Made by a program: the position numbers and the translations under genes. Positions 1 through 41,781 of a DNA stretch of 64,000 nt are shown piece by piece. The stretch is taken from IMG/VR virus record IMGVR_UViG_3300046167_000825, positions 1 through 64,000 of that record. One strand, given 5' to 3'. The number at the start of each line of letters is the position of its first letter. Position 1 is the first letter of the stretch. Under the pieces are notes generated by a model. That model saw nothing but the letters and a program-made list of their open reading frames with translations. It had not been told where the DNA came from and did no database searches.

Positions 1-2291
1 CTCAATGGATCTCTCGTCATCAAACGAAAGCCGACCTTGATGCTGAGGCTCTTCAGTTGAAGACAGATATTTTCCGTGTCAATCGTTGCCCCGTGACACA
101 AGACCTTGTTGTTGGGGGTGATTGTGAGGTATCCACTCGTTCATTAAATATGCCTAACATGGGTAATACCTTTGTGTATTCTCCTCTTGGTTTGGATTAT
201 GGCTTCTGGCAAGACACGAAAGACCACGATTACAAAACCATCACCTTATATAACTCAGCCACAATGAACACTTACGATGTCGAACCCTTGAAAAATCCTA
301 CAAGGTACGACCTCCAACCGATTGCTCGTGAAAAGATTGTTGCCGTCAATCCTAGTTCTGCTCAGAGTAACACCCTAATGCAGATGAGTCCTAAGATAGC
401 CATTGAATCCATTGAGTATTTTGTGGATAGCACGGCTGCTCGTGTCGAAAAACATTATGTAATCACTTGTGCTGGAACAGTGGCGAGTGGGGATTTTTTC
501 CCCCCGAAAGACATGCTCTCTGTTGGAACACCAATAATCTTCCGAGATACGGGGGTTGCTAACTTGGATGGCAGAGTTGGTTATGTCGTTGGTTTTGAGG
601 ACATTCAGTTGTTTGACAATGCTGCTGCCTCTAGTTTATACAACAAGGTTCGTGTGAAAGTCTACACACCCCTTTTCAATATCGCCATAACAAACCCAAC
701 GCCATTGGCTAATGGCTATGTGGCTGTGACAGAAGGACTTCGACCATTGTCGGTCAATGGTATAGACCTTTCAAAACCCTTCAAACTACGATCTAGTTCT
801 GATTTGATGGCTGGTTCATTGGTCACAGAACATTTAACGAACTACGCAATAGTTGGGGCAAGTGAATACCAATGGACTCCTTCTTCTCAGTGGTGGGAAG
901 TTCAAGTTCCTTACGCTCATTTGGGTTGGGATGCCGATAGAGGTATCAATAGAAAAGCACAAGACACCACTACCCCGTCAATTCTTCGCTTTGATTTGAC
1001 AGAGGCATACACGCAAGCACAACAAAGTGGTTCTGGTATTGGTTCTAACATTGAAGAAAAACGCCCTACGGGTGTTCGTTTGAACCGTATCTGGGTGAAC
1101 TTCGGTGTGTGGGGTAACCCCTCTCAAATCGGCACAATCCCAAAATCTGATTGGACAGCAACACCAGCAGTTCGTTTCAAGTCGGGGGCTACTTCAGATT
1201 CGGTTCAATCCGTGACTTTCAACTTGAAGGTGGAGATACCATCTAAGGCAAAGTCTGGTGACCCTCGTTACGGAGGTGGTTTACTTCCCTTTGGTGGTCG
1301 TGCTCCAACTGTTTCGGGTCACCAAATAGCCCCTAATAAAGATGTTATTATAGCGACACCTCAGATTTTTGACATCCCTCTATATGTCAACAGAGAGGCT
1401 GGAGAGATATCCCCTAATGTCACGGATCGCTTCCGTTCAAAGGGTCTTGATAATACCTCAAAAGATTGGTTAGTGGGAGATTCCGAAAATGGTTTGGGTA
1501 TTGGGTCGACTGCCGACCCTAGTACTTTCTATGACATCACTACCGTCCCAGCGGGAACTGGGCTCACTATCCCCAATGCTTCTACGGTTGCTATTTGGGG
1601 TGGTCTGGACTCTTTCGCTTTCGGTGATGGTACTTCGGGCGATCCTATGAATAGCCTTGTTCAATGTTCTCTCTCCCCACGAGGATCTATGTTGGGTGTC
1701 AATCCTTTCGTAGGCTCACAAGGTGTATCTCCTAGTCTTAACTGGAGTGAGTTTGATGATGATGCCGCTAAAGAACTAGAGAGGTCTTTGCATAAGAACT
1801 CTCTCACGGGAATTACTATCGCACACATTGCCTCTTACACAGCACCTCCCGCTTTGGCGAGTTCGGACACAACAAACATTTGTCCTCACTCTTTCACAAT
1901 TGCTCTCACTCCAATAGGGGATGAGTTTGAAGTGGATAAGACTCTTGACTACGGTGCGGGACAGTTTTTGGATTCTAATACTGATGTTGGTAGTTTGGGG
2001 TACAACTTGAAGCCAGATAATAACAGAAGATTCAAAGTAGGGAACTGGTTGGATGCTATTGTGGCACGGTATGGCTTAGATATGTCGGGTTCAATGCTTC
2101 CAGAAGGTGCGAAAGTTTGGTTGGAAGTCACTGTCCCACAAGTCGTCCGAACTTACGGTACGGGAATAGATACTCCGACAGAGCGAACTGCAAATGGTAC
2201 ATGGGTTGGTCAAGTGCTTTGTTCCTTTGAAGTCGAAACTGGTGACGGAACGGCTATCACGAAAGATGTCAATCTGTTGTCTGACGAATAA
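1..2291 (+). CDS. C-terminal part of a large probable virion structural protein (5'-truncated by window)
   Basis: Frame is open from base 3 (QWISRHQTKADLDAEALQLKTDIF...), so the gene starts before the window; G/S/T/D-rich, beta-like composition. Confidence 0.6.
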   Translation, partial: QWISRHQTKADLDAEALQLKTDIFRVNRCPVTQDLVVGGDCEVSTRSLNMPNMGNTFVYSPLGLDYGFWQDTKDHDYKTITLYNSATMNTYDVEPLKNPTRYDLQPIAREKIVAVNPSSAQSNTLMQMSPKIAIESIEYFVDSTAARVEKHYVITCAGTVASGDFFPPKDMLSVGTPIIFRDTGVANLDGRVGYVVGFEDIQLFDNAAASSLYNKVRVKVYTPLFNIAITNPTPLANGYVAVTEGLRPLSVNGIDLSKPFKLRSSSDLMAGSLVTEHLTNYAIVGASEYQWTPSSQWWEVQVPYAHLGWDADRGINRKAQDTTTPSILRFDLTEAYTQAQQSGSGIGSNIEEKRPTGVRLNRIWVNFGVWGNPSQIGTIPKSDWTATPAVRFKSGATSDSVQSVTFNLKVEIPSKAKSGDPRYGGGLLPFGGRAPTVSGHQIAPNKDVIIATPQIFDIPLYVNREAGEISPNVTDRFRSKGLDNTSKDWLVGDSENGLGIGSTADPSTFYDITTVPAGTGLTIPNASTVAIWGGLDSFAFGDGTSGDPMNSLVQCSLSPRGSMLGVNPFVGSQGVSPSLNWSEFDDDAAKELERSLHKNSLTGITIAHIASYTAPPALASSDTTNICPHSFTIALTPIGDEFEVDKTLDYGAGQFLDSNTDVGSLGYNLKPDNNRRFKVGNWLDAIVARYGLDMSGSMLPEGAKVWLEVTVPQVVRTYGTGIDTPTERTANGTWVGQVLCSFEVETGDGTAITKDVNLLSDE

Positions 2292-2301
2292 TCATTTTAT
2301 A
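2288..2301 (+). promoter_or_regulatory. Putative late promoter motif ATAA-N6-TATA
   Basis: ATAAtcatttTATA, 23 bp before a gene with AGGAGGAG RBS; same spacing at eight other sites. Confidence 0.6.
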
Positions 2302-2324
2302 AAGAAAGAATACAAAAAGGAGGA

Positions 2325-3143
2325 GTGATGAATAATCTTATTAAACGAGTGGCAGACCGTCACGAGAAGACGGCTAGAATACCAGAGATAGAGGGGAAAT
2401 GGAAAAGGGTTTCCCCCCTCATTGGAACTTGGTTTGAGAACTTGATAACCAAATTGGGTTCTCTTCAAGATAGCATGGCTTATGCCGAGAAGATTGCCGA
2501 CAAAGAGTTCAAGAGAATAGAGAATCTCGTGAAGCGAAAGTATGGGAAAACCGATAATTGGGAAGATGACGAGTACGAAGATCCTTTAGTTCAAGCCTAT
2601 TATTGGATAGACGATTTCTGGGGTCAAGTGAGATCGGGGAGATATGCAGAACTCAACAAGTTTCAACGAAAAATCGAAGAAGCGAAGACAGCCCTTGAAG
2701 AGACAATCTATGATGTCAATAGTTGGGGTTCGCACGCTACTCGACTAGCAAGTGAGACGAAAGAGGCAGCAATTTACCGAGATAACGCATTAAAGAATCT
2801 TGTGTCTTTTCTTGTGAAAGCATACACAAGAAACAAACCCTCTCGACCCGAATATCAACAGATAGGCAACTCGGAAGGGTACGGACTCACCATCGGAAGA
2901 GATGCAGATAAAGAGGCGAAGCGTATCGCTAATGTTTTCTTGAAAGTTCTTAAACGGATAGGCGACAAGGATTTCTTCCAAGACAAGACCTATTCGGATG
3001 ATTACGAAACCTCTATTATCTTCACAAAGAAACCCAATGAGAATGGTCAAGGCATGAAAGTTCAGATCATTCTTGACAATAGAAAAAATGACATGGGTGA
3101 GTTTCTCAAAGACCGCTTCCAAGTTTATATCTGGGAAGAGTAA
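2325..3143 (+). CDS. Hypothetical late protein with N-terminal RVADRH...KTA tag (possible internal head protein)
   Basis: Strong RBS; N-terminus MMNNLIKRVADRHEKTA matches a motif in other late ORFs. Confidence 0.75.
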   Translation: MMNNLIKRVADRHEKTARIPEIEGKWKRVSPLIGTWFENLITKLGSLQDSMAYAEKIADKEFKRIENLVKRKYGKTDNWEDDEYEDPLVQAYYWIDDFWGQVRSGRYAELNKFQRKIEEAKTALEETIYDVNSWGSHATRLASETKEAAIYRDNALKNLVSFLVKAYTRNKPSRPEYQQIGNSEGYGLTIGRDADKEAKRIANVFLKVLKRIGDKDFFQDKTYSDDYETSIIFTKKPNENGQGMKVQIILDNRKNDMGEFLKDRFQVYIWEE

Positions 3144-3149
3144 TCTCTG

Positions 3150-3190
3150 AAAAATCTTCCTTTCCAGTTCTGGGAAGGAAGATTTTTTTT
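3150..3190 (+). terminator. Intrinsic terminator
   Basis: AAAATCTTCCTTTCCAG-TT-CTGGGAAGGAAGATTTT followed by T tract. Confidence 0.8.
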
Positions 3191-3374
3191 GGCTTGGATG
3201 TGTAGTTACAACCCTTTAGTTCGTTATCCTAGTTCGCTAGGATTTTTTTGTGCTTAAAAACCCTAGAAAAATCAAGGGGTTATCCTAGTTCGGTTTTCAA
3301 AGAAACCCCTTTTGGGGTTGTATGCCTTTTGAGTTTTCGTATACTTCCCACACAATACATAGGAGGTATTACTT

Positions 3375-4118
3375 ATGACTACAAATCAATCAGAGCCAAT
3401 CGTTACGGATAAGGGTATTGCTTGGACTAGCAAGACTTGGAATCCGATGACGGGTTGTTCCAAGATATCCCCAGCATGCAAGAACTGTTATGCTAAAACC
3501 CTTGCAGATCGAATGAAACTTCATCCGAACGCTAAAGTGGCAGATAGATACCGTCACGGCTTCACTCCAACTCTCCAAGCCGATAAACTCGGTGAGCCAT
3601 ACAAGTGGCGTGGTTCTCACTGGGTGTTCGTAAACTCAATGAGTGATATCTTCCATGAGGACTTTTCTTTGGCTTATATCCAAGCCGTATTCGATGTCAT
3701 GAACCGTACTCCCCAACACAACTACCAAGTCCTCACAAAGAGGTCAGAGCGTATGCTGGAACTGTCAAAGCATCTCACTTGGTCAGACAATATTTGGATG
3801 GGTGTTTCTGTTGAAGATCAGAAGCGACAGTATCGTATCGAACATCTTCGTCAGATGCCCACAGAGAACCGTTTCTTGTCTATTGAGCCTCTCCTAGAGC
3901 CTTTACCCTTCCTAGACCTCACGGGCATTGGCTGGGTTATTGTAGGGGGCGAGAGTGGCAAAGGACATAGACCTATCAAAGAGAGTTGGGTGACACCTAT
4001 CCGTGATTACTGTTTGCGTGAGAGTATTCCGTTCTTTTTCAAGCAGTGGGGTGGAGCGAGATCAAAATCTAATGGTAAGGAACTTCAAGGGCAACAATGG
4101 TGCGAGATGCCAGCCTAG
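3375..4118 (+). CDS. Phage Gp37/Gp68 family (DUF5131) radical-SAM-like protein
   Basis: IAWTSKTWNPMTGCSKISPACKNCYA, FVNSMSDIFHE, QVLTKR, FLSIEPLL, WVIVGGESG and PFFFKQWGG are hallmark motifs of the family. Confidence 0.92.
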   Translation: MTTNQSEPIVTDKGIAWTSKTWNPMTGCSKISPACKNCYAKTLADRMKLHPNAKVADRYRHGFTPTLQADKLGEPYKWRGSHWVFVNSMSDIFHEDFSLAYIQAVFDVMNRTPQHNYQVLTKRSERMLELSKHLTWSDNIWMGVSVEDQKRQYRIEHLRQMPTENRFLSIEPLLEPLPFLDLTGIGWVIVGGESGKGHRPIKESWVTPIRDYCLRESIPFFFKQWGGARSKSNGKELQGQQWCEMPA

Positions 4119-4342: not shown

Positions 4343-4396
4343 TTGGGGTCGCTTCTTTGATATCTTTCCGTATAGGGGACACACAAGGAGCAACCA

Positions 4397-4672
4397 ATGA
4401 TTGAAGTTTATATCTATCCCGTCACGGGAAAACCTTACATGAAACAAATCTCTGACAGTCTTGAAGGGCTACAACAAGTCGTGGGGGGTTATATTGAAGT
4501 GGCGAGACATCCCGCCACCGAAGTCGTGTCTTTCGCTTTCAATGACAAGAACCCCCCGAGAGTCTTACTCATCGTCAATGAGAATGGCTTGTTGGAAAAA
4601 CTCCCCCCTAACGAGAATATCGGTGGCATTGTGGGTCAGTGTTTCTTTATTCGTGACACCGATTTCAAGTAG
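4397..4672 (+). CDS. DUF3846-like protein
   Basis: SLEGLQQVVGGYIE...LIVNENG...LPPN...IVG pattern; AAGGAG RBS. Confidence 0.75.
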   Translation: MIEVYIYPVTGKPYMKQISDSLEGLQQVVGGYIEVARHPATEVVSFAFNDKNPPRVLLIVNENGLLEKLPPNENIGGIVGQCFFIRDTDFK

Positions 4673-4685: not shown

Positions 4686-4699
4686 ATAACTCGGCTATA
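4686..4699 (+). promoter_or_regulatory. Putative late promoter motif ATAA-N6-TATA
   Basis: ATAActcggcTATA at the head of the 4735-9526 operon. Confidence 0.55.
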
Positions 4700-4734
4700 C
4701 AAAACCCTTTCATATACAATGAGAGGGTTTTTTT

Positions 4735-9532: not shown

Positions 9533-9580
9533 GCGGTTGTAGTTTTAAGAGAGATCCGTATAGGTGTTGCAATCAACATT
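9533..9580 (+). promoter_or_regulatory. Repeated early-type promoter cassette, copy 1
   Basis: GCGGTTGTAGTTTTAAGAGAGATCCGTATA...CAATCAACATT; 26/30 identical to copies 2 and 3. Confidence 0.75.
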
Positions 9581-10218: not shown

Positions 10219-10253
10219 CAAAAGTTCTGTATATTTTTCATAAGGAGTTTAAT

Positions 10254-10706: not shown

Positions 10707-10759
10707 TGCGGTTGCACTTTTAAGAAAGACCCGTATAAGAAGTGTAAGCAATCAACATT
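10707..10759 (+). promoter_or_regulatory. Repeated early-type promoter cassette, copy 2
   Basis: TGCGGTTGCACTTTTAAGAAAGACCCGTATA...CAATCAACATT; TTGCAC-N16-TATAAG is sigma70-like. Confidence 0.75.
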
Positions 10760-10774
10760 GACTGGGAGGTCATT

Positions 10775-10971: not shown

Positions 10972-10985
10972 ATAATCTGTTTATA
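10972..10985 (+). promoter_or_regulatory. Putative late promoter motif ATAA-N6-TATA
   Basis: ATAAtctgttTATA before the 11008 ORF. Confidence 0.6.
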
Positions 10986-12171: not shown

Positions 12172-12202
12172 TATACGGGTCTTTCTTAAAAGTGCAACCG
12201 CA
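12172..12202 (-). promoter_or_regulatory. Repeated early-type promoter cassette, copy 3
   Basis: Exact 31-bp reverse complement of copy 2 (10707-10737). Confidence 0.78.
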
Positions 12203-12744: not shown

Positions 12745-12815
12745 GGGTAATACTCCTTATGGGGGGGTGACATCTTTTATACGCAAAGCCAAACATAAAA
12801 CGATCCCTCTTTTGA

Positions 12816-12829
12816 ATAATCCCCTTATA
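12816..12829 (+). promoter_or_regulatory. Putative late promoter motif ATAA-N6-TATA
   Basis: ATAAtcccctTATA. Confidence 0.6.
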
Positions 12830-13307: not shown

Positions 13308-13321
13308 ATAATCGGTCTATA
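13308..13321 (+). promoter_or_regulatory. Putative late promoter motif ATAA-N6-TATA
   Basis: ATAAtcggtcTATA before the tail sheath gene. Confidence 0.62.
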
Positions 13322-13361: not shown

Positions 13362-16300
13362 ATGGCATTCCCAAGTTCAATCTATGCACCCCCAAGTGTT
13401 TACACCAAAACCAATTTTGATTCACCTTTGAGTGGAGCATTGGCTGGTGTGAAGATTCCAGTTCTCATTGGAACGGGTAGCGAAATCTTATCACAACCCG
13501 ATCTTGAGTTAGTTCGAGGTTCTAGTTCTAGTGTCGACCAACAAATTGTCCAAGAAGACATGTCGGGTCGCATTGTGGCTTCTGAGTTGGCTTCGGGAGA
13601 AGTCGTTCTCGGTTCTTATGACGGAACAACAAACCAAGTTCAAGTTCGCAACTTCCCGATAGTCACTGGGGATGGTTCTGGAACAACTACCACCAAACCA
13701 AGCGATGTCAGTGTTTCTCTAAATGGAGAACCCGTTGTTGTTTTGGCTATTGATGGAGCGAAGGGATTATTGACACTTTCTGAATCACCGAAAATGGGAG
13801 ATTCTTTGAAGGTGACCTACTTCTTCAATCGAACTGACACTTTGACAACCGATGAGGTTTCTGCTCAAGTTTCTGAGGATTCTGCTTTGGTTTATCTAGC
13901 GAAGGCTGGAAACTATAAAGTATTCCCATCTTCTTCTGATACTCTCCTTCTGACTGTTGATGGGGTTTCCCTCGTAATAACTCTCGTTGGGGATGCTTCA
14001 AATGAAATCACAGCGGCTTCTCTCGTCACTCAGATTAAGTCTGGTGCTGGGGTGACTTCTCTTGATGCCACAACATACACCAACAACGAAGGGAACACTT
14101 CTGTGGCTCTCTCTGCTGATAAAGAGATTGTTGTTGGTAGTGGTTCTGCAAACTCTTCTCTTGGGTTGTCTGCTGGAACATCGACTGGTCGTAACAAGAC
14201 TTTTTATGTCTTCAATGGCCCTATCGTAGATGGTTCTAACGGCGGTGTTACAACTACTGATGTTGCTGATGTGACTGTCAAGGTAGATGGGGTTCAAGTT
14301 ATTCCGTCTAGCGTTGATGGGTTCTCTCGTGCTGTGACTTTATCTGTGCCACCCGCTAATGGAAGCACTGTCACTATCCAATACTATTTCAACACTTGGC
14401 AAGATACCTTTGATTATCTCGCACACACGGGTATCACTGAAGTGACTCTTGCTGGCTTCTCGGCTGGGAAAGGTGATTTCATTCAAGGTGTTGATTTCAT
14501 TCTTAAAGATGACAAGATTCTTTGGGGAACGGGTGTTATCGTTGAAACTTCTGTTTCATCTCAAGGATATTCTCTGTTTGGTGAGAACCAAATCACAGCG
14601 AACTTGGTTGATAACAAAGGATACCTTGAGCCTTGTTCTGCTGTTGTTGATACTTCCGTATCTCCAGCGAAAGAAAGCAAGACCGAGTTCAGACTTCCTT
14701 TCGTACCAACCACTGGAAATGGTCGTGGAACTCCAATCGGGATTTCATTGTTCCAAACAGTATCTAATGGTCGTATTGATCTCCCAACAAATCGCCCCGA
14801 CCTTGTGAAAGCATATTGGGGATTCTCTATTCAAGACGCTCTTGATCGTGGGGAAGTTTCAGTTCTGTCTGTTGATCATGCAAGTGCTTCTATCACTCTC
14901 CGTGACCCAGTTCCTACTGGTGCTATGGTTTGGGCTACACAGTATTACAATGTCATTCAAGATTCTGAGTACTCTGTTGTTTGTGAAACTGCTGGTGTTT
15001 CTGGTGTGGGGACATACTCCATCTCAGACAAGAGTGGTTCTGGACTTGTTATTCCTCAGTTCGTTGCAAAGAGTGCTGGATTATCTACTGTCACTATCGA
15101 GTTCCCAAGTGGGTCTGAATTGTTGAGTGATGTTCGTTATGAAACACCACACAACACCAAGTCCTTCAGTGGTGCAGTCGAAGAAGAAATCACGGTTACT
15201 TTTTCTGACAAAGCAGCAACTCCAGCGGCACATACTTTCAGTTCGACTGGCGAGTTCGCTTTCATTGACGGACAAAGTGATAGCATTGAGATTACAGTTG
15301 ATGGCGTACCCGCTTCTTCTGCTCTTTCTGCTGTGGCACACCAAGCACACATCACTGGTGCAGAACTCGTTTATGGCGATCCCTCTGCTCAAACAATGAA
15401 TGTTTCTGCTGGTCTCGATGATTCTCTCATTCTCACCGTTGATGGTTTGCAAGTTGATGTCACATTGACCTCTGGTGCTACAGTTGCTATCGGTGATTTG
15501 ATTGACGATATCAATATGGCAGTTGATGGTCAGATTCCTCGATTGACTGGTGCGAGCAAGTTCGTGAGTGCTTACGAGATTACGGCAGACAATAGCGATT
15601 TTACAATCAATGTCGATGCTACTCCTCATGCTATCTCCATTGATCTTGGCTCTTACCCTACGGCTTCTGCTCTTGTGACTAACATCCAATCCAAGATCGA
15701 TGCAATTCCCGCTATCGATAGTGGTGCTGGTACAGATGTCAAAGTTGTTGCGGCAGTTGATTCTTCTGGACATATCTACTTTACTTTTGAGCGAGTGGGT
15801 AATGTTGAGAAAGCGAAACTGACTAGTGCAACTCAATGGTTGAAGCAGTTCGGATTCGATGAGAGCGAACTGTTCATCGGTAATGGTCTTGGTGGTTGGT
15901 TCGCTTGTGCGACATTGGACTCAATGCCAACTGTCGGTGGTGACTCGTACTATGACCGTATCATTCTCCGAAACCGTATTCTCCCAGCAGATAAACTAGG
16001 GGAAGCCCAAGCAAGTATTCAGATTGATGTGACGACAGCCCAAGATATTCTAGGGTTATCTATGGCTCAGTATGGTGAGGCACACGCTACCACTACTGTC
16101 AAACCAGCCTCTCTTGTAGGAGAAATCGGTTTAACTGGCTCACAAGCAACTGGTGATGGTGCATACCCACAAGTGACCTTGTATCCAAGTGGTTCTACCA
16201 ATCCTCAGAACAACATCCTTCTTCTGACTATTGATGGAACAACACACGAGGTTGTCTTCACACAGAAAGACGGAACTGCTTTGACTGAATCTGGTCATGA

Positions 16301-21821: not shown

Positions 21822-21835
21822 ATAAATACTTTATA
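21822..21835 (+). promoter_or_regulatory. Putative late promoter motif ATAA-N6-TATA
   Basis: ATAAatacttTATA before the tail tube gene. Confidence 0.6.
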
Positions 21836-33634: not shown

Positions 33635-34889
33635 AACCGTCATTGGGGAAGATTTGAAACTGCTAGACGGTGTTTCCGACAAGGTGATTCAAATGGTTTC
33701 TATTCTAAGAAAAACCACTGACACACGAAAGCCTCAAGACTCGTACGAATATGGTTTTTTAAGTTCGTGGGATGGACACCCTCTTTATAATGGAGCAACA
33801 GACACTAGGAAGGCAGAACTACAAGAGTGTCTCCAAGAAAACTCTGCAAGTTATTTCCAAGAATCAATGGTGAAAACACCCCAAAATGGCAACTACACTT
33901 TCCGTGCTCCTAAAGAAGAACCTTATTACTCACCCGTTTTTCCCGTGAGTGACGAGAAGGGCTTTGAGCATTTTGGAACATACGCTTACGGGAGGGGGAT
34001 GACACTCAAATCCCTCGCACAGATCATCGACACAGCCCCAGAATTATGGGGGGACTTATCCCCTCTCGACCTCAATCGTCTTTACGGGGCAATTGCTGTG
34101 GGCAAAAATAGAAAACTCTTGTCAGTCAAGGAAGCAGAAAGTGGTTCATCCCTCCAAAGTAATTACCGAGCGTTCGATAACAACTATCGAACTACTCTCA
34201 ATGAGAGTATCGCAAACTACATCACTACGAGGGGTCAAGAAGAAGTTTTATCTCAAGATATCATCACTGCTATGACCACTGCTGGAGTGGATTTTTCTTC
34301 TACAGATTCAGTGTTCCAACATCTCAAAACATGGACAACAACGGGTCAAGAAGAAGTTGTTGGTGGTGATGCTGGGATAAACATCGCTTCAAAAATCTTT
34401 GAACAAGCCTTCGTTGGGAATATCATCACGACCAACCAACAATATGGTCAGAAGATTGCTGCTGGTAATGTTCCCATCGAACTAGCCCGACTGGATCAGT
34501 TCTATTCCCCCACCACTTGTAACGGAGGAGCAGCCAACGCCCTCTCGACCTCAGATGCTTTCAGTCTTGAATCCGATCAGTATTCCTTCGCTTACAACTC
34601 CAACACGGGGGACTTCAATGAAACAGCGTGGCAACAGATGTTAGCCGAGAATCGCCTCATTGATTGGTTCTCTCACCAAGAGGCATTGAGGGGGGAGATA
34701 CAAGAGCCGACCATCACGATCCAAGATTTCCAAGATGATGCCAATGCTATTGGGGAGGCTTTTTCAACTTTGTCCTCTGACATCCAACAGACACCAGATG
34801 TCTTCGGTCAGATAGTTCTAGGGAAATCCCCCGAAAACACCCAATCGACTTCGTTACCACCCCCAACAATAAATGAAGAAGATGAGTAA
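33555..34889 (+). CDS. Probable C-terminal continuation of the baseplate hub
   Basis: 80-bp overlap, no RBS, implausible N-terminus. Confidence 0.6.
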   Translation: MRVLRLRCQPKYLVGTNYYKGTSVPSETVIGEDLKLLDGVSDKVIQMVSILRKTTDTRKPQDSYEYGFLSSWDGHPLYNGATDTRKAELQECLQENSASYFQESMVKTPQNGNYTFRAPKEEPYYSPVFPVSDEKGFEHFGTYAYGRGMTLKSLAQIIDTAPELWGDLSPLDLNRLYGAIAVGKNRKLLSVKEAESGSSLQSNYRAFDNNYRTTLNESIANYITTRGQEEVLSQDIITAMTTAGVDFSSTDSVFQHLKTWTTTGQEEVVGGDAGINIASKIFEQAFVGNIITTNQQYGQKIAAGNVPIELARLDQFYSPTTCNGGAANALSTSDAFSLESDQYSFAYNSNTGDFNETAWQQMLAENRLIDWFSHQEALRGEIQEPTITIQDFQDDANAIGEAFSTLSSDIQQTPDVFGQIVLGKSPENTQSTSLPPPTINEEDE

Positions 34890-34899
34890 TGGTTTTATA
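34886..34899 (+). promoter_or_regulatory. Putative late promoter motif variant GTAA-N6-TATA
   Basis: GTAAtggtttTATA before the gp25-like gene. Confidence 0.5.
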
Positions 34900-34915: not shown

Positions 34916-36013
34916 ATGAGTTTTGATTTTCAGATAGGGTTTCCTTGCCCACATTATATTGTTGAAGAACATGTCGAACTGTCTGCTGATAGGAGAGGCA
35001 TCGTCACCCGTTATCCCATTGCTGCTAAGGGGACAGTGTCCATTCTTATCAATGACGAGTTCTTTGTTCCCCAAAGGGGATTGGCTTCGAGAGCCGTTTT
35101 GAGGGGAGGGCAGAGTGGCCCCTATCGTGTAGGGAAGCACGAGGATGAACTGACGGTTTCCAATCAAGACAGTTCATTCACGGTCAAAATCCCACATGGA
35201 CTCCGTATCCCCACTGATGACCTCGTGGTTTTATTCAATAAGGCTTTCAAGTCGAAGGGTGAACAGTTCATTTTTGCGACCAATGTGTCGGGTTTCCTCA
35301 TTTTTTATGATGTGGCTAGTTCGGGTGGGAAGTCAAGGATTCTCGTGACGGGTTCGGCTGTTAATACATTGGGTTTCAAACAGAGGGGTATGAAGGGTCG
35401 TCTTTTATATCCAGCGTGGGTGTTGGAGAAGCAGTTGTCTTCTGATGGTGAGTTCTACGGAAGATTCTTGAGATTCACGAAGCCTCTCAAGAACAACCCC
35501 CTCATTAAAGTGTCCTATACCACCCCAGCAGAACAATGTGTTCGTTGTCGTTCCACTTATGTCGAGAATGATTACAGATATGACAGCAAGGGTGATATGA
35601 AACTCATAACGAATGAGGATCTCCTTTACCAAGCCTCCTTGAAAGCCCTCTTGACCATCAAGGGGAGTAACCCTTATTACAGATGGTACGGCACGAACTT
35701 GTTGAACGCCATTGGGAAGAAGGCTGTTCTAGGGCTACAAAACGCCATCAAACAAGAGATATCATCAGCCCTCCAGACATTTCAGCAAGGGCAGTTGGCA
35801 CAAGCCAAGTATCAAACGGTATCATCTAAGGAGAGATTATTCTCTTTGAGCAGTGTGGAGGTTTATCCACACGAGACAGACCCAACGGCATTTCTTGCTG
35901 AGGTGGTCATTGTCAATGCTTCCCAAGAACCCATTTCGCTTTCTGTTATATATACTGCCCCAAGTGCAATCGCTTTGGCGGGGTCGAATGGAAAGTCGCT
36001 AGGAATACGATGA
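34916..36013 (+). CDS. Baseplate wedge / sheath initiator (gp25/GpW-like C-terminal domain)
   Basis: LLYQASLKALLTIKGSNPYYRWYGTNL; precedes baseplate J. Confidence 0.75.
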   Translation: MSFDFQIGFPCPHYIVEEHVELSADRRGIVTRYPIAAKGTVSILINDEFFVPQRGLASRAVLRGGQSGPYRVGKHEDELTVSNQDSSFTVKIPHGLRIPTDDLVVLFNKAFKSKGEQFIFATNVSGFLIFYDVASSGGKSRILVTGSAVNTLGFKQRGMKGRLLYPAWVLEKQLSSDGEFYGRFLRFTKPLKNNPLIKVSYTTPAEQCVRCRSTYVENDYRYDSKGDMKLITNEDLLYQASLKALLTIKGSNPYYRWYGTNLLNAIGKKAVLGLQNAIKQEISSALQTFQQGQLAQAKYQTVSSKERLFSLSSVEVYPHETDPTAFLAEVVIVNASQEPISLSVIYTAPSAIALAGSNGKSLGIR

Positions 36014-36020: not shown

Positions 36021-39000
36021 ATGAGAAAACCACAAGTATATAAGCCCGATGGCGAACTAACTGACCAGTTCACATACAAGACGACAATCCCAGAGAAGTT
36101 CTTCTCTGGTTTGCTGCCTCCCAACACAGTCGATGTTCAAATCTCTATTCGTGGTGGGGCTTTTGTGTCCAATCCCGATCTCATTGTTTTTGAAGATAGA
36201 GCGTGGTCAGCCCCCAATCCCGAAGTCTACCCCAATGGGTTGGAGTTAATCGCGGGGGAGAACCACATCCAAATCAGAACAATCGGAACGAGAGGTGATA
36301 CCTCTGAGATTCTTGATATCAAAGTCACGCTCATCCAAGATGATTCTATTTATGCCCTCTCAAAACCACCCACCAATCTATCACTATCTCGTGAGAGAGA
36401 TACCGTCACAGTCACTTGTGAAGGTGTGGTTGACCCCAATGTCATAGGATACAACTTCTATGCTGCCACAGAGCAAGGTGGGGGTGGTGTGGGCTATTCT
36501 CGTATCAATCTCAATACCATCCGTTCGGGGGAAACCATTGAGGATTTCGTGGAACTCCAAGACATCTCTTTCTTAGAAGATGTGGCTACCCAAGATTCGG
36601 GTGACCCCTATTCCGACCCTCAGTATATTTCTGTCATCACGGAACAAAAAGATATTCTCGGGAATGTCTTCCAGAAGAAAGAAAGAGGGATAAAAGAAAT
36701 ACCAGAAGGCACGGAACAACTGAGAATTGCTTACAAGGTTAGTTCAGTTCGCACGACTTCCATGTATTCTTTCAAGCACAATAGATTATTCTCGGAGAAC
36801 TCAAACCCTCCTACAATCTTCAGTTCTGAGTTCACGTCAATCAGCCGTGAAGACTCCTTGTTCTATGTGGCAACGGCTTTGTTTTTCGATGACATCAACA
36901 GCATTGAGTACGAGAGTGTTTTTTCAGTGGAAGTTATTGGGAGTCCCTTATTGGTATCCCTTGTGGGGAGCAATCTCCCTCAAGTATCCCGAAATCAAAT
37001 CAGAGAGGATTTCATTTCGTCCGTGTATCGTTCCAATCCCCAACTCCGAGTCGATCCCACATCTGTTCTTTCAGACACCGTCATTGAACCCTTCTCATCA
37101 GAGATGGAGAGGATGCGATTCCTATTGGATTTCTTCAATAAAAGTTCATCCCTCGCTGGGTTATTGCAGATAGACGATCCCAATAACACGGGGCAGTCGG
37201 CTGACATCACAGCCTCTAATTATAAGCGTGCCATTCAGATTGCTTTCCGTATCGACAACTATGCAGACACCCAAGCCTTCATAGATTCGATCATTGAAGC
37301 GAGGGCAATGAACTTCGGTGTGACACGGAGAACCTCCACTCGTTCAAGTGGGGAGATAACTTTTTACGTCACGAAACAACCGACCTCTTCGGTGCAGATA
37401 CCATTGGGGACAGAAGTTTCTGGTGGGGGAGGCACATTCACTACGCTCCAACGGGGCGTTATAAATGTATCGAATATTGCCTCCTATTACAATCCAGCCT
37501 TGAAACGGTGGGAAGTGTCTATTCCAGTCCAAGCCAGCATTGGTGGTTCAAATGGTAATGTCGCACAAGGGCTAGTTCGGTCATCGAACTTGACGGGAGT
37601 TCAACTCACCAACAATGCTGCTTTCTTTGGGGGAGCAGACAGAGAAACCAACAGAGAGTTCATCACGAGAGCCATGAACGCTTTGGCGAGTCATGATGTC
37701 GGAACAGAAAGGGGCTTTCTTCAGTTAGCCGCTGACATCGTGGGAGTACAGAATCTTAAAGTGGTGGCATCGGGACACAATCTCATGCAACGAGATAAGG
37801 ATACTTCTGGTAACCATCGTGGTGGTAAAGTAGATATCTGGGTGCGTTCAGACAACCCCGCCATCGTGACGGATTCCTTTGCTTTCTCTTATTCTTTAGG
37901 GAAAGATGTGACTTTTGAGGTGGTTGGATCACCCACTGACTTAATCTTCAAGGCGATTGATTCTTCCTTGACGGAGGATGCCCCCATTCTGAGATTGCTC
38001 TCAGAAACCGATAGATTTGGTTTCCGTAATGGCTCGACTGGACAATCCTTTGATATCACGGGTGCAAAGGTCATTCAATACAACATGATACAACTCTCCA
38101 CTGAGATCAATCAACCCGATGTTTCTTACGGGGATGTCATTTTTGGGGACTATTATCGACAAGATGGCAATGACCATCTATTCACGAGGCAACCCGTTGA
38201 GTCCATCGTGACCGTAGAGGGAACAATTAGTGGTGTTCTCCCCACAACGGCATACGAGTTGGTCAATCCGAGTGTTCCTCTCGAAACGGGATTCTCTCTT
38301 AACGAAGGTTCTTATCTTCGCATTAAGGGTTTCACAGACGATGGTTCTCGTGTCCCTTCTGGTGATTCTTTGAGTGCCACTGACGAAACACATGTCATCT
38401 TATCGAACTACCCCGAATATCTCAATAATCTAGGGGCTGACCCTCTCACGGTCACGGTCACCAATCTTGAGAAGACTATCACTTATCGTTCTCCGAGTGA
38501 CCCAAGTGGTATATCGGATTTCACTGTCCAAGAGAGAGAGGGCTTTCCTTTGGCTGTTTTCTTGACGGACAACTCTGAGATACGCTCTGGACAAGAGATT
38601 TTGATTTCGTATTCTTACGGGGAGAACTTCACTGTAACCTACGGGATTTCATCTTCTATTTCCACGACACAGAACATCATCGACCTCAATAAACCTCTCA
38701 CGGCAGATGTCCTAGTGAAGAAAGCGTTGGCTGTTCCAGTGGATGTTGAGGCTACGATTGTTTTGAGCGTGGGGGCTAGTTCGGGAGTGGTTGACAACAA
38801 TATCCGAACGACTCTAGCAAACTTCTTTGCGACACTGACACTAGGCGACCCCGTTCGTCAAAGTGACCTCGTTGAAATAATGGACTCTACTCGTGGTGTT
38901 TCTTATGTCATTCTCCCTATAACAAGAATGACACGCCAAGAGGCAGCAATGGTTCTCCGTGAATCTTTAGTTGTGGGTTCTTTGTCTGATTACACCCCTC

Positions 39001-39512
39001 TCCCAAATGTGAGTGGTGTGGCAGATGTTTATCTCCTTCAAAATCAATTGGATTTCGTAGCCCAAGAGGGTGGTGGTTCAGAAGAAGATTTCAGAGGGGT
39101 TTTCCAAGATCAAGTCCTCCTCGAAACCTTATCACAACCCAACAACTATTATATCGGTTCTGGTGTGGGGAGAGCGTACATCATCGGTGACGGGGGCTTG
39201 TCTATTCAAGGGTTCAGTGATGACTTAACTCTTTCCAATGAAGGCTTCACACCCAATGAGTACGCCACAGTTCGGAAAGAGCGAACTGGGAATAGGGTTA
39301 TGATTTCCACACCCAAGAACAAATTACCAACAGAGTGTTCTTATTCTGTGACCTATTATGTGGGTTATGACAAGGCAGTCAAAAACATCGACCCCATTGA
39401 TGCTGAGTATCTAACTCTCGGAAATATCTCTCTCACATACGAAGAAGATTCGGCACAAGTCCGAACACTCCAGACGGGTTCTTCTTTGCGTAGTGGTGGG
39501 GGGTCGTACTGA
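36021..39512 (+). CDS. Baseplate J / gp6-like wedge protein with extra Ig/FN3 domains
   Basis: NFGVTRR..SSGEITF, GGSNGNVAQG, FFGGADRETNREF, GGKVDIWV, LGDPVRQSDL..GVSYV. Confidence 0.88.
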   Translation: MRKPQVYKPDGELTDQFTYKTTIPEKFFSGLLPPNTVDVQISIRGGAFVSNPDLIVFEDRAWSAPNPEVYPNGLELIAGENHIQIRTIGTRGDTSEILDIKVTLIQDDSIYALSKPPTNLSLSRERDTVTVTCEGVVDPNVIGYNFYAATEQGGGGVGYSRINLNTIRSGETIEDFVELQDISFLEDVATQDSGDPYSDPQYISVITEQKDILGNVFQKKERGIKEIPEGTEQLRIAYKVSSVRTTSMYSFKHNRLFSENSNPPTIFSSEFTSISREDSLFYVATALFFDDINSIEYESVFSVEVIGSPLLVSLVGSNLPQVSRNQIREDFISSVYRSNPQLRVDPTSVLSDTVIEPFSSEMERMRFLLDFFNKSSSLAGLLQIDDPNNTGQSADITASNYKRAIQIAFRIDNYADTQAFIDSIIEARAMNFGVTRRTSTRSSGEITFYVTKQPTSSVQIPLGTEVSGGGGTFTTLQRGVINVSNIASYYNPALKRWEVSIPVQASIGGSNGNVAQGLVRSSNLTGVQLTNNAAFFGGADRETNREFITRAMNALASHDVGTERGFLQLAADIVGVQNLKVVASGHNLMQRDKDTSGNHRGGKVDIWVRSDNPAIVTDSFAFSYSLGKDVTFEVVGSPTDLIFKAIDSSLTEDAPILRLLSETDRFGFRNGSTGQSFDITGAKVIQYNMIQLSTEINQPDVSYGDVIFGDYYRQDGNDHLFTRQPVESIVTVEGTISGVLPTTAYELVNPSVPLETGFSLNEGSYLRIKGFTDDGSRVPSGDSLSATDETHVILSNYPEYLNNLGADPLTVTVTNLEKTITYRSPSDPSGISDFTVQEREGFPLAVFLTDNSEIRSGQEILISYSYGENFTVTYGISSSISTTQNIIDLNKPLTADVLVKKALAVPVDVEATIVLSVGASSGVVDNNIRTTLANFFATLTLGDPVRQSDLVEIMDSTRGVSYVILPITRMTRQEAAMVLRESLVVGSLSDYTPLPNVSGVADVYLLQNQLDFVAQEGGGSEEDFRGVFQDQVLLETLSQPNNYYIGSGVGRAYIIGDGGLSIQGFSDDLTLSNEGFTPNEYATVRKERTGNRVMISTPKNKLPTECSYSVTYYVGYDKAVKNIDPIDAEYLTLGNISLTYEEDSAQVRTLQTGSSLRSGGGSY

Positions 39513-40777
39513 TGTCAAAGAAACTGTTCCCTCAAAGTGTGACCCAAAACCCTTCTTCTCTCAAAGAACAAGGGCAAGAGTATCAAGTTCAAGTTCGTGA
39601 GCAAGTCGAACTCATCTTGAAGCAGTTCCTAGCAGTCCTCCCTTCTAACTATGTGTCTCAAACGACAGCACCTTTTTATACTGTCCAGTTCCAAGCAATG
39701 GCAGAGGCAGTAGCCCGACTCCAATTAGGACTCCAAGAATCCTTGAAAGATTCACTCTATGAGTTCACGAGGTCGGAGTTCCTTTGGCAGATGTTGGGGG
39801 TGATGGTCTTCCCGAAAGTCTACCACAACAAGATGCAGATACCCCTCATAGACAAGGACACTGATTACCGTGACTTCTTACGGGCAATGGTAGTTCTCCT
39901 CCTCAAAGGAACAAAGCATGCCCCTATCCAAGAGGGTACGAACCTTCTGACGGATGCTACGGTCACTCTCATAGAGAAAGCCCTCACAGCAAATCAAGAG
40001 GGTTCAGCGTGGGGTTATGACGATTTACACACCTTTGAGGTAAATGTCGAAAAGGATGGGGGGACTTCTTTTCCAGACCGACCTTTTGATTTGGAATACA
40101 ACATTTCGGTTATCCTTGATGCGTTGAAGCCAGCCTATACAATATATGAATACCGTCATGTTTTTCGTGAAACATTTGGGCATATCTTTCAAGATGAAAT
40201 GTTTGCGAACTTAGATATGTACGAGTATGATGACCTCCGTAAATACTGTGGGGGAGCGAAAAGAATACATGGGGAAGGGGAAGTTCTATCGGGCAGATTT
40301 CTGTTGTCGGATTCAGACCGTTTTTTTGATAATATCGGAACACCAGCGTATCTGATTGTTGAGGACAAACGCTATGAAGTTTCAGAAATACTTTCTTTTC
40401 CTATGGGTGATGACCCTACTCCCCGTCATTACACAACCAGTTCGGGGTTGGAGGGATATGCAACCATCGAGGGGGATACCCTCACCGACAAATGTCAAAA
40501 CTGGGTATTGGCAAAGGAAGGTGAGAAAATCACTTTCCACGAAGGGGCGAACACGGGAGTCTATCGTCTGAAAGATGTTCTAGGCTCGGATGGTGGGAGT
40601 GTTGGTTTCGTCACGGGATCAAGCACTCAAGTTCGGGTGGGGAAATCTATCGTTCGGACAACCACTCGTTTACCCGTTGGGGTATCTTTCCCCTACGAAC
40701 TGTCTGTTGATAGACTAGGTGTTCAAATAGAAAGAACCCGCACACAAGAAAATCTCACACTCCAATGTGTCCTTTGA
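39512..40777 (+). CDS. Baseplate wedge protein (gp7/GpI-like)
   Basis: LPSNY, DTDYRDFLR, ILDALKPAYT; directly follows J. Confidence 0.7.
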   Translation: MSKKLFPQSVTQNPSSLKEQGQEYQVQVREQVELILKQFLAVLPSNYVSQTTAPFYTVQFQAMAEAVARLQLGLQESLKDSLYEFTRSEFLWQMLGVMVFPKVYHNKMQIPLIDKDTDYRDFLRAMVVLLLKGTKHAPIQEGTNLLTDATVTLIEKALTANQEGSAWGYDDLHTFEVNVEKDGGTSFPDRPFDLEYNISVILDALKPAYTIYEYRHVFRETFGHIFQDEMFANLDMYEYDDLRKYCGGAKRIHGEGEVLSGRFLLSDSDRFFDNIGTPAYLIVEDKRYEVSEILSFPMGDDPTPRHYTTSSGLEGYATIEGDTLTDKCQNWVLAKEGEKITFHEGANTGVYRLKDVLGSDGGSVGFVTGSSTQVRVGKSIVRTTTRLPVGVSFPYELSVDRLGVQIERTRTQENLTLQCVL

Positions 40778-40790
40778 TAATTTATTTATA
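40777..40790 (+). promoter_or_regulatory. Putative late promoter motif ATAA-N6-TATA
   Basis: ATAAtttattTATA. Confidence 0.6.
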
Positions 40791-40818
40791 AAGTGTTTTG
40801 TAGAAACTGGAGAAGACA

Positions 40819-41763
40819 ATGAAACTGGAAGAACGTGTAGCCCAAAGACACTTGATAAAAACATCATGTGAAGAAGTGGCTAGGGGGATATCTAAAAGCC
40901 GAGTGGCTAGTTCGCAAAGAACTGTTCGAGATGAACTGGGGAATCCAGTGATCCTAGCCTCGTTTTTTGACCCCAATGTTCGGGTGTCTTCGAGAGGCAT
41001 CCTAACGAAAGCGAAAGAGTTGTGGAAGGCTTTCAAAACAGCCCCCGATAAATGGGAGGAGTTCAAAGAGAAACTCGGATTGGCTGGCGTGAGTACTCTC
41101 GCTCTCATGAAAGAGTTCCCTAAAAAGATGAAAGAGTTCTGGGGCAAAGCCAACGAACTAATCAAAAAAACCTTCGCAAAGGCTGGTGCTGCTCTTATCA
41201 AGAAGTTCCCCCAGTTGGAAATCTACTTTAAGGTCACTCAGAAACTCCCTTCTGTGACATCGTTTTTCAAGAATCTTCTAAATAAGTTCCCCAAACTGAA
41301 ACGGATGCTCGATGCTGTGGCAAGTAAAGCATCAACGCTCGCCAATACTGTCGATGGCTTTTTTCAAAAGAACTCTTTGTTGAAGCCCGCGAATTGGTTC
41401 GCTCGTGGTGCGTTCTTCACTTATATTTGGATGAATGTCGCTGAAATATCGTGGAATGTTCCCGAAATAATGAGAGGGATGCTCGGAGGTATGTCTTGGG
41501 CTGAGATTTTATCTTCTCTCCCAGAGAGTGGTTTGGGATTGGTGGTTTCTTTGTTGTTCGGTGCTTTCATACCATTCCCTTTCGGAGGAGCATTTGCCTC
41601 TAAAATCGGACTAAATGCTTTATTGCCTATGGCACTTGCCTTTCAGATATGGTTTCTCGTGTCGAAAGGGTATGCTTACATCAAAAGGGGTGTGTTGTAC
41701 TTCACAGATAAAGTGAAGACCTTTGGGATTGATATCATCACTGATATTGCCCTCCCCCTTTGA
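40819..41763 (+). CDS. Late membrane-active protein with RVAQRH...KTS tag
   Basis: Lys-rich amphipathic helices followed by 2-3 hydrophobic segments. Confidence 0.7.
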   Translation: MKLEERVAQRHLIKTSCEEVARGISKSRVASSQRTVRDELGNPVILASFFDPNVRVSSRGILTKAKELWKAFKTAPDKWEEFKEKLGLAGVSTLALMKEFPKKMKEFWGKANELIKKTFAKAGAALIKKFPQLEIYFKVTQKLPSVTSFFKNLLNKFPKLKRMLDAVASKASTLANTVDGFFQKNSLLKPANWFARGAFFTYIWMNVAEISWNVPEIMRGMLGGMSWAEILSSLPESGLGLVVSLLFGAFIPFPFGGAFASKIGLNALLPMALAFQIWFLVSKGYAYIKRGVLYFTDKVKTFGIDIITDIALPL

Positions 41764-41767
41764 ACCA

Positions 41768-41781
41768 ATAACTAGACTATA
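41768..41781 (+). promoter_or_regulatory. Putative late promoter motif ATAA-N6-TATA
   Basis: ATAActagacTATA. Confidence 0.6.

What the first reader, a model, noticed from the sequence alone, without database searches (positions are those of the whole stretch)
2288..41781. Fixed-spacing upstream motif ATAA-N6-TATA at nine structural/late genes
Seen at 2288, 4686, 10972, 12816, 13308, 21822, 34886 (GTAA), 40777 and 41768. All are on the coding strand, all have a 6-bp variable spacer, and all lie about 16-65 bp before a start codon, including those of sheath, tube and gp25-like genes. I did not see it before the accessory genes, which use a CGTATA-type element. It does not match sigma70 or the T4 late TATAAATA. 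Inference: recognition site of a phage-encoded late sigma factor or RNA polymerase.
Basis: partly seen in the sequence, partly recalled or inferred. Interest (0 to 1): 0.62.

Follow-up and report, generated by a model that had tools for sequence, protein, structure and literature searches.

The report
Late-gene promoter motif of marine jumbo phage
The repeated ATAA-N6-TATA word is real and is most likely the late (virion-gene) promoter of an uncultured 289-kb marine phage that carries two sigma-factor genes of its own; it is a well-behaved example of a known strategy, with an unusual promoter layout that lacks a -35 box.

Summary
RTAA-N6-TATA occurs 10 times in the window, all on the + strand, against 1.7 expected. 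Nine of the ten lie 16-64 nt before a start codon. Across the whole 289-kb phage record, 22 copies lie sense-upstream of ORFs against 1.3 expected, and only the 6-bp spacing is enriched. The full consensus is R-ATAAT-C-t-n-T-C-TATA-t, with no -35 element.

The motif precedes the giant sheath, the gp25-like baseplate gene, other tail-module genes and a tRNA. It is kept at orthologous positions in relatives whose proteins are only 38-66% identical.

A second motif, GsGrTyG-N17-CCGTATA, precedes DNA polymerase, helicase and clamp-loader genes.

The genome encodes two sigma-70-family proteins. No RNA polymerase subunit gene and no T7-like polymerase gene was found.

Best reading: a late-class promoter read by host core polymerase carrying a phage sigma. 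Which sigma it is, and where transcription starts, are inferred and not shown.

Site 4686 is doubtful, 55317 is chance, and the "tube" call could not be verified. This is a new variant of a known kind, of moderate interest.

The parts
2288..2301 (+). Type II (late-class) promoter motif before the 272-aa ORF 2325-3143
   Evidence: Exact match. Matrix score 17.5-18.9. The orthologous gene in high-GC relatives keeps a yCTATA motif.
4686..4699 (+). Doubtful copy of the motif before ORF 4735-6132
   Evidence: Exact match to RTAAN6TATA but below the matrix threshold. A hairpin plus T-run lies between it and the ATG. Only a weak counterpart in one relative (L033) and none in the high-GC relatives L031 and L032.
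10972..10985 (+). Type II promoter motif before the 182-aa ORF 11008-11556
   Evidence: score about 20.
12816..12829 (+). Type II promoter motif before the 144-aa ORF 12854-13288 (orthologues in L031-L033 carry Zn_ribbon_8). It lies back to back with a type I promoter on the - strand.
   Evidence: Relatives keep TCTATA(a/c) here. Population variants in seawater runs fall beside the 15-mer and not inside it.
13308..13321 (+). Type II promoter motif before the giant tail sheath gene
   Evidence: Relatives keep TCTATAAA with a variable upstream half. The only metatranscriptome contigs on 10500-16400 lie at 13358-15010.
13362..18119 (+). Tail sheath gene, 1585 aa
   Evidence: phrog_2839 tail sheath, 1.7e-27. 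More than 1100 homologues of 1580-1870 aa in metagenomes.
21822..21835 (+). Type II promoter motif before the 262-aa ORF 21900-22688 (possible tube, unverified)
   Evidence: AATAA-N5-TTTATAT is kept in two relatives. A strong terminator lies upstream at 21553-21579.
34886..34899 (+). Variant type II motif (G at the first base) before the gp25-like baseplate gene
   Evidence: GTAATGGTTTTATATT is identical in five genomes while the following 14 nt vary.
34916..36013 (+). gp25-like sheath-initiator / baseplate wedge gene
   Evidence: phrog_43 and phrog_975, about 1e-5; PF10934, 1.3e-4.
36021..39512 (+). Baseplate J (gp6-like) gene in the same late unit
   Evidence: PF04865, 8.6e-21; phrog_6, 2.8e-27.
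40777..40790 (+). Type II promoter motif before the 314-aa ORF 40819-41763
   Evidence: ATAAT-N4-TTC-r-ATA-y is kept in four relatives.
41768..41781 (+). Type II promoter motif before the 426-aa ORF 41813-43093
   Evidence: ATAACTAGAyTATATT is kept in relatives with 38-43% protein identity.
55317..55330 (+). Chance match, antisense inside the 3376-aa ORF
   Evidence: No downstream + strand gene for 8.7 kb. Below the matrix threshold.
3314..3343 (+). Type I (early/middle-class) promoter GsGrTyG-N17-yCGTATA before ORF 3375-4118
4345..4374 (+). Type I promoter before the small ORF 4397-4672
9533..9562 (+). Type I promoter (GCGGTTG subclass) before ORF 9598-10002
10708..10737 (+). Type I promoter (GCGGTTG subclass)
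12172..12201 (-). Type I promoter (GCGGTTG subclass) for a small - strand ORF
12778..12807 (-). Type I promoter (GGGATCG subclass) for the - strand ORF 12744-12460

Best explanation
The motif is the late-class promoter of a marine jumbo myovirus that has no RNA polymerase of its own. The phage redirects the host core enzyme with phage-encoded sigma-70-family factors.

The element is a compact 16-bp unit, R-ATAAT-C-t-n-T-C-TATA-t. Its downstream half, yCTATAw, is read as a -10-like element with TATA at about -12 to -9. It resembles the CTATAT -10 box of alphaproteobacterial sigma-70 promoters. Its upstream half, RATAAT, lies one helical turn away at about -23 to -18 and takes the place of a -35 box, which is absent. 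Transcription would start about 7-9 nt after TATA, giving 5' leaders of roughly 10-55 nt that carry the GGAG ribosome-binding site.

A second phage-specific class (type I: GsGrTyG, a rigid 17-nt spacer, then CCGTATA) drives replication genes and many small genes. A single sigma-70-like promoter (TTGAnA-N16-TAAATA) precedes the sigma-1 operon.

The most economical cascade is: host sigma-70, then sigma-1, then type I genes (including sigma-2), then type II late genes through sigma-2. The reverse assignment of the two sigmas is almost as likely.

Shown: the motif, its statistics, its gene partition, its conservation, and the presence of the sigma genes. Inferred: promoter function, late timing, the start site, and which sigma reads it.
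For: - Enrichment, strand bias and spacing specificity.
- Matrix consensus with 27 strong and about 35 total sites, and no conservation upstream of -23.
- Sequence after TATA is T-rich and G-poor for about 8 nt, then becomes purine-rich, as expected for a discriminator followed by a start site.
- Gene partition. Type II sites sit before the sheath, the gp25-like gene (with Baseplate_J next in the same unit) and other tail-module ORFs, and another sits just beyond the window's end, at the head of the 16-kb - strand unit holding the 3376-aa ORF. Type I sits before DNA polymerase A, SNF2 and RecD2 helicases, the clamp loader and an SMC-like ATPase.
- Type II copies sit at the heads of divergent transcription units and 20 nt before the only tRNA gene, so they cannot be mere mRNA-internal signals.
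- The motif is kept at orthologous positions in genomes with 38-66% protein identity while the flanks diverge.
- In 55-60% GC relatives the yCTATA half persists with a different upstream half, GTTAG or GGT.
- Two sigma genes and no third paralogue.
- No beta-like or T7-like polymerase gene.
- Canonical sigma-70 pattern matches are not enriched.
- The sigma-1 operon has a unique sigma-70-like promoter conserved in two relatives.
- Sigma-2 lies behind a type I site.
- CTATAT is the published -10 consensus in S. meliloti (PMC2873474).
- RNA contigs from a marine metatranscriptome cover only the sheath gene within 10500-16400.
Against: - There is no transcript 5' end, timing or binding data. The RNA evidence is four low-depth contigs and cannot show a start site.
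- A sigma-70-family factor reading an element at -23 to -18 instead of -35 has no close, tested precedent that I could cite.
- Both sigmas have a region-4-like C-terminus, which normally implies a -35 contact.
- Sigma-2 also has a conserved TGGTATAAT right before its ATG. Both sigmas could therefore be early, so the cascade order is not fixed.
- The record may be incomplete (CheckV 66%), so a further sigma or a polymerase gene could lie outside it.
- Most type II-driven genes outside the window have no recognisable function, so 'late/structural' rests mainly on the tail module.
Confidence: 0.7

Rival explanations
1. Activator-dependent late promoter. Only the yCTATAw half is read by a sigma factor (phage or host). 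The upstream RATAAT half is the box of a separate phage DNA-binding co-activator, in the manner of sigma appropriation at T4 middle promoters.
For: The two halves evolve semi-independently. yCTATA is kept across the whole clade, while the upstream half changes from ATAAT to GTATTC or TTATTG and to GTTAG in high-GC relatives. Type I and type II share the same TATA core. A position at -23 to -18 is awkward for sigma region 4.
Against: No candidate activator was identified. The rigid 6-bp spacing and the conserved 'spacer' bases T, C and T-C look like one continuous recognition surface. Two sigmas for two phage-specific classes is the simpler count.
Confidence: 0.15
2. Promoter of an unrecognised phage RNA polymerase (single-subunit or otherwise). 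The TATA would then lie immediately before the start site, as in T7- and SP6-type promoters.
For: The element is a contiguous block of about 16 bp without a -35 box. It has an AT-rich upstream part and CTATA downstream. In the 60% GC relative the sites read ...CCTATAGG and ...GCCTATAGC, which look like T7-family promoters.
Against: No PF00940 or PF00562 match in 289 kb (the PF00940 control rang in none of the 14 control genomes, which are bacteria and archaea, so that absence is soft). Two sigma genes are present. The 3376-aa ORF shows no polymerase motif, no family hit and no PDB hit. The bases after TATA are T-rich and not the purine-rich start seen in T7-type promoters.
Confidence: 0.08
3. 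An RNA-level signal in 5' leaders, such as a processing or translational-control site, and not a DNA promoter.
For: The motif is strand-specific and always lies within 16-64 nt of a start codon.
Against: The distance to the start codon and to the ribosome-binding site is variable. Copies sit at the heads of divergent units where no upstream transcript can arrive, and before a tRNA. There is no dyad symmetry or conserved fold. Strong copies exist with no ORF behind them (248863, 271083).
Confidence: 0.04
4. Chance recurrence of an AT-rich word in AT-rich intergenic DNA.
For: Intergenic DNA is 40% GC against 44.7% overall. Two of the ten window matches (4686 and 55317) are probably of this kind.
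Against: 22 observed against 1.3 expected in shuffles of the same upstream DNA, 4 antisense, only the N6 spacing enriched, and orthologous conservation.
Confidence: 0.01

Closest known systems
Bacillus phage SPO1 sigma cascade (gp28 for middle, gp33/34 for late promoters); own knowledge, see also PMC13401047 listed
   Same: A large phage without its own polymerase. Successive phage sigma factors retarget the host core enzyme to class-specific consensus promoters that differ from the host's. The sigma genes are placed under the preceding class.
   Different: SPO1 middle and late promoters are classical bipartite -35/-10 elements with 17-18 bp spacers. Only type I here has that layout. The motif in question has no -35 box and its second element lies one helical turn upstream of the -10-like box. 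The SPO1 sigmas are not close homologues: sigma-1's best matches are RpoD and RpoS models.
T4 late promoter TATAAATA read by gp55 with gp33 and the sliding clamp (own knowledge)
   Same: A -35-less, AT-rich, single compact late element before virion genes of a myovirus.
   Different: The sequence differs, and TATAAATA is not the enriched word. The element here is twice as long and bipartite. The phage sigmas here carry region-4-like ends, whereas gp55 is a region-2-only protein. No gp55 model was run.
Single-element promoters of phage-encoded sigma factors such as phiEco32 gp36
   Same: A phage sigma with host core reads an extended -10-type element without a -35 box. A GTATA/TATA core is shared.
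   Different: Here there is a second conserved block 10 bp upstream. No homology to gp36 was tested.
T7/SP6-type single-subunit polymerase promoters (own knowledge)
   Same: Contiguous conservation of about 16-17 bp, an AT-rich upstream part, and CTATA near the 3' end. High-GC relatives read CCTATAGG.
   Different: No such polymerase gene was found. The element is shorter than the 23-bp T7 promoter. The sequence after TATA is T-rich.
Alphaproteobacterial sigma-70 promoter CTTGAC-N17-CTATAT (PMC2873474)
   Same: The downstream half, CTATAT, is identical to that -10 consensus.
   Different: No CTTGAC or any other conserved base lies at -35. The host is unknown.
'Moraphages', marine jumbo phages up to 307 kb with a sigma factor, Hc1 histone-like genes and no polymerase (PMC12619734)
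   Same: Habitat, size range, a sigma gene, and no RNA polymerase. Relatives of this window also carry PF07432 Hc1 genes.
   Different: Membership was not verified. The T4-like terminase, portal and capsid models gave nothing here, whereas moraphages are reported with such genes. That paper reports no promoter motifs.

Membership tests
Sigma-70-family-dependent promoter | -10-like element with T-12 A-11 | tested here: met
   TATA is invariant in A-T-A and 25/27 in the first T. C or T lies at -13 and T at -8 in 18/27. It is identical to the CTATAT -10 consensus.
Sigma-70-family-dependent promoter | -35 element 16-18 bp upstream of the -10 | tested here: not met
   Information content is about 0 from -52 to -24 in 27 sites. 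Type I promoters of the same genome do have one, with a rigid spacer.
Sigma-70-family-dependent promoter | A cognate sigma factor is available | tested here: met
   Two sigma-70-family genes: PF04542 at 3e-18 and 1e-12, phrog_351 at 2e-55 and 1e-18.
Sigma-70-family-dependent promoter | Transcription starts 6-9 nt after the -10 and depends on the sigma | not testable with these tools
   Only assembled metatranscriptome contigs were available. The first begins 37 nt after TATA.
T4-type late promoter | TATAAATA at -10 | tested here: not met
   The consensus is TCTATAt preceded by ATAATC. TATAAATA is not among the enriched upstream words.
T7-like single-subunit polymerase promoter | A T7-like RNA polymerase gene in the genome | tested here: not met
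   PF00940 gave no match in 289 kb. The control rang in none of the 14 control genomes (bacteria and archaea) and the record may be incomplete, so this absence is soft.
T7-like single-subunit polymerase promoter | Conserved block running to the start site, with a purine-rich initial transcript | tested here: inconclusive
   The block ends in TATA-t and the next 8 nt are T-rich and G-poor. No start-site data.
phiKZ/AR9-type jumbo-phage polymerase promoters | Split beta/beta'-like polymerase genes | tested here: not met
   PF00562 gave no match, while the control rang in 14 of 14 genomes.
Phage late-gene class | Precedes virion genes and not replication genes | tested here: met
   Type II sites precede the sheath, gp25-like and other tail-module genes (Baseplate_J follows gp25-like in the same unit), and the tape-measure-like and hub-like genes lie in the same + strand tail module. 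The replication genes carry type I.
Phage late-gene class | Expressed late in infection | not testable with these tools
   The phage is uncultured and no time course exists.

The most novel reading that the evidence does not exclude
A sigma-70-family factor of a phage reads a promoter with no -35 box. Its two conserved blocks, RATAAT and yCTATAw, sit exactly one helical turn apart at about -22 and -12. This would be a promoter geometry not described for this protein family. The downstream block is shared by a clade of more than 1000 giant-sheath marine phages, with contigs up to 530 kb, and the upstream block co-varies with lineage. The whole forms a three-tier cascade of host sigma, phage sigma and phage sigma.
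Probability: 0.3. Interest if true: 0.6.

Novelty: new variant of a known kind. Interest (0 to 1): 0.45.

Why it matters
Uncultured jumbo phages are abundant in the sea: this one was found in 24 runs from 21 studies. Their infection programmes are unknown.

Two sharply defined promoter classes, plus two sigma genes, give a directly testable transcription map. The classes sort ORFan genes into early/middle and late sets. They predict non-coding transcripts and tRNA expression. They also offer short, portable, orthogonal promoter-sigma pairs.

If the -35-less, one-turn bipartite layout is really read by a sigma factor alone, it would widen the known range of promoter recognition by this family.

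Tried and rejected
- Megablast of 10 kb against cultured-phage records: no match.
- PHROGs and Pfam on ten type II-driven proteins outside the window: nothing usable.
- Atlas look-alikes for the 408-aa protein: no usable hit.
- AF2 model of the 262-aa tube candidate from a 3-row alignment: pLDDT 27.9. It was discarded and no fold search was run.
- T4-type terminase, portal and capsid models on the whole record: no match.
- PDB, Pfam and PHROG searches and a motif scan of the 3376-aa ORF for polymerase signatures: nothing.
- Attempt to search the relatives' full records through handles: the records are not held.
- Looking for sigma orthologues in IMG/VR and JGI metagenomes: only distant (30-33%) or near-identical (89-100%) copies. 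Covariation between sigma and promoter could therefore not be tested.
- Population variants in seawater runs are too few (about 2% divergence) to show selective constraint on the motif.
- One search was a mistaken call with a 1-residue input.
- Read laying was given 5,901 letters. No alternative genetic code was used.

Full report
**What the window is**

The window is the first 64 kb of a 289,014-bp linear IMG/VR virus record with 44.7% GC. CheckV estimates it at 66% complete. It has no near relative among cultured phages. Near-identical DNA occurs in 24 seawater or marine runs from 21 studies.

The window holds a contractile-tail module:
- a 1585-aa sheath at 13362-18119 (phrog_2839);
- a gp25-like sheath initiator at 34916-36013;
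- a Baseplate_J protein at 36021-39512;
- a weak tape-measure-like protein at 24959-28603;
- a weak hub-like protein at 44263-45960.

Yes. RTAA-N6-TATA occurs 10 times in the window, all on the + strand, against 1.68 +/- 1.41 in shuffles.

In the whole record, 22 copies lie on the sense strand within 100 nt upstream of ORFs. Dinucleotide shuffles of those same upstream windows give 1.26 +/- 1.14, with a maximum of 6. Only 4 copies are antisense.

Only the 6-bp spacing is enriched: 22 against 0-5 for spacers of 2-5 and 7-11. Nine of the ten window copies fall in the 3% of positions that lie 10-70 nt before a long + strand ORF (P about 2e-13).

An iterated weight matrix converges on 27 strong sites with the consensus R-ATAAT-C-t-n-T-C-TATA-t. 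A core matrix finds about 35 sites. There is no conserved base between -52 and -24.

Two of the ten window matches are weak. Site 4686 is below threshold and has a hairpin plus T-run between it and the ATG. Site 55317 is antisense inside a giant ORF.

**A second promoter class**

The most enriched upstream word in the genome is CGTATA. Aligning its copies shows one architecture: GsGrTyG, a rigid 17-nt spacer, then CCGTATA. It has two sub-classes, GCGGTTG and GGGATCG, and about 55 sites in total.

The genes behind it include DNA polymerase A, SNF2 and RecD2 helicases, a clamp-loader subunit and an SMC-like ATPase.

Seven type I sites sit in the window, before small non-structural ORFs. Matches to the canonical sigma-70 pattern are not enriched in the window.

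**Conservation**

Homologues of the 426-aa protein (38-53% identity) and of the sheath (47-66%) led to syntenic marine contigs.

- Before the gp25-like gene, GTAATGGTTTTATATT is identical in five genomes, while the next 14 nt differ.
- Before the 426-aa gene, ATAACTAGAyTATATT is kept.
- Before the 314-aa gene, ATAAT-N4-TTC-r-ATA-y is kept.
- Before the sheath, TCTATAAA is kept while the upstream half drifts to GTATTC or TTATTG.
- In two relatives of 55% and 60% GC, the orthologous genes carry GTTAG-n-G-n-T-y-CTATA-g or similar.

So the yCTATA half is the clade-wide anchor and the upstream half is lineage-specific. Two further relatives, reached through the sigma-1 gene, carry both classes unchanged.

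**Promoter or something else?**

Type II copies stand at the heads of divergent transcription units. Examples are 113862 (+), 177872 (+), 250095 (+), 275303 (-), and the - strand site just beyond the window's end, which heads the 16-kb unit containing the 3376-aa ORF. One lies 20 nt before the only tRNA gene, tRNA-Ala at 268830-268904.

The distance to the start codon varies from 16 to 64 nt, and the element is not a dyad. This argues against an mRNA signal or a symmetric repressor site.

After TATA the sequence is T-rich and G-poor for about 8 nt and then turns purine-rich. That fits TATA at -12 to -9 with a start 7-9 nt further on.

CTATAT is also the published -10 consensus of S. meliloti sigma-70 promoters (PMC2873474).

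Metatranscriptome contigs on 10500-16400 lie only in the sheath gene, from 13358 on. This is consistent with a start between the motif and the ATG, but it proves nothing.

**Who reads it?**

The record encodes two sigma-70-family proteins and no further paralogue.
- Sigma-1 is at 191237-191989 and has 250 aa. It has regions 1.2, 2 and 4. Its best models are RpoD and RpoS, and its region 2.3-2.4 is canonical.
- Sigma-2 is at 155283-155906 and has 207 aa. Pfam detects only region 2. It is of ECF size and has an HTH-like C-terminus.

No beta-like gene and no T7-like polymerase gene was found. The 3376-aa late ORF shows no polymerase signature.

The sigma-1 operon is preceded by TTGAnA-N16-TAAATA. 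This sigma-70-like promoter is unique in the genome and is conserved in two relatives. Sigma-2 lies in the densest type I region, behind a type I site.

The simplest cascade is therefore: host sigma-70, then sigma-1, then type I genes (including sigma-2), then type II.

However, sigma-2 also has a conserved TGGTATAAT five bases before its ATG. Type I's rigid spacer and CGT-containing -10 look ECF-like, whereas type II's CTATAT looks housekeeping-like. The reverse assignment therefore remains nearly as likely. I put sigma-2 at about 0.5, sigma-1 at about 0.35 and another factor at about 0.15, given that the element is a promoter.

**Comparison with known systems**

The strategy is that of SPO1 or T4: a large phage without a polymerase that retargets the host core enzyme. 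The layout is not. There is no -35 box, and the second block lies one helical turn upstream of the -10-like box.

The element is not the T4 late box. It cannot be filed with T7-type or phiKZ-type promoters, because the defining polymerase genes were sought and not found.

A 2025 paper describes marine 'moraphages' with a sigma factor, Hc1 genes and no polymerase (PMC12619734). Relatives of this window also carry Hc1 genes, but membership is unverified and that paper reports no promoters. Literature searches for the motif words found no prior description.

**Verdict**

This is a new variant of a known kind, of moderate interest. Its value lies in giving a testable transcription map for an abundant uncultured phage clade and a possibly unusual promoter geometry.

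Noticed in passing
window 3314-3343, 4345-4374, 9533-9562, 10204-10233, 10708-10737 (+); 12172-12201, 12778-12807 (-); about 55 sites genome-wide: A second, very sharp promoter-like class: GsGrTyG, a rigid 17-nt spacer, then CCGTATA. The GCGGTTG subclass also shares its spacer (tttTtTaAgAGAt) and a leader with repeated CAATCAA. It is clustered at 149-165 kb on both strands before small ORFs.
   Followed up: yes
window 7217-8221 (+): A 334-aa protein matches Pfam Volactin (an archaeal actin homologue) at 2.6e-71 over its full length. It is conserved in all relatives examined, and in one of them (L030) it has its own type II promoter.
   Followed up: partly
window 13362-18119 (+): The sheath protein is 1585 aa, several times the usual size. 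More than 1100 homologues of 1580-1870 aa exist in metagenomes, on contigs up to 437 kb (NCBI GCA_900089805.1) and 531 kb.
   Followed up: partly
window 51021-61151 (-): A 3376-aa ORF rich in G, D, T and S has no Pfam, PHROG or PDB match. It is conserved (3390 aa) in relatives. It lies in a 16-kb - strand unit headed by a type II site just beyond the window's end (about G000 64045-64058).
   Followed up: partly
window 18215-19756 (+): Directly after the sheath gene sits a ROS/MucR DNA-binding plus HNH/homing-endonuclease-like protein. Relatives have other cargo in this slot: a DNA methylase or Hc1 histone-like genes.
   Followed up: partly
window 30314-33634 and 33555-34889 (+): Two overlapping ORFs (1106 and 444 aa) correspond to one ORF of 1537-1557 aa in relatives. 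The 444-aa part aligns at 59% identity to the C-terminus. This points to a frameshift near 33590-33634, either real or an assembly error.
   Followed up: partly
G000 189637-189674, before the sigma-1 operon (189693-191989): The only good sigma-70-like promoter found in the genome is TTGAGA-N16-TAAATA. It is conserved as TTGAnA-N16-TAAATA in two relatives with 61-62% identical sigma-1.
   Followed up: yes
G000 155265-155285, before sigma-2: TGGTATAAT (an extended -10 look-alike) ends 5 nt before the sigma-2 ATG. It is kept in a strain whose upstream DNA differs. This would imply a leaderless or near-leaderless mRNA.
   Followed up: partly
G000 268796-268904: The only tRNA gene, tRNA-Ala (tgc), starts 20 nt after a type II motif.
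   Followed up: yes
G000 248863-248877 and 271083-271097 (+): Two of the best-scoring type II sites have no ORF within 280-1240 nt downstream, and one faces antisense into - strand genes. They may drive non-coding or antisense RNAs. Rfam finds no known family there.
   Followed up: partly
window 4700-4734; G000 276006-276016 and 276651-276662: A hairpin followed by a T-run ends directly at the start codon of the next gene, so a terminator-like structure lies inside what would be the 5' leader.
   Followed up: no
L031 23886-24989 (-), a relative at 48% sheath identity: A 1018-aa ORF with C2c1 (Cas12b) RuvC-like and helical-domain Pfam hits lies next to a helicase in a related phage contig.
   Followed up: no
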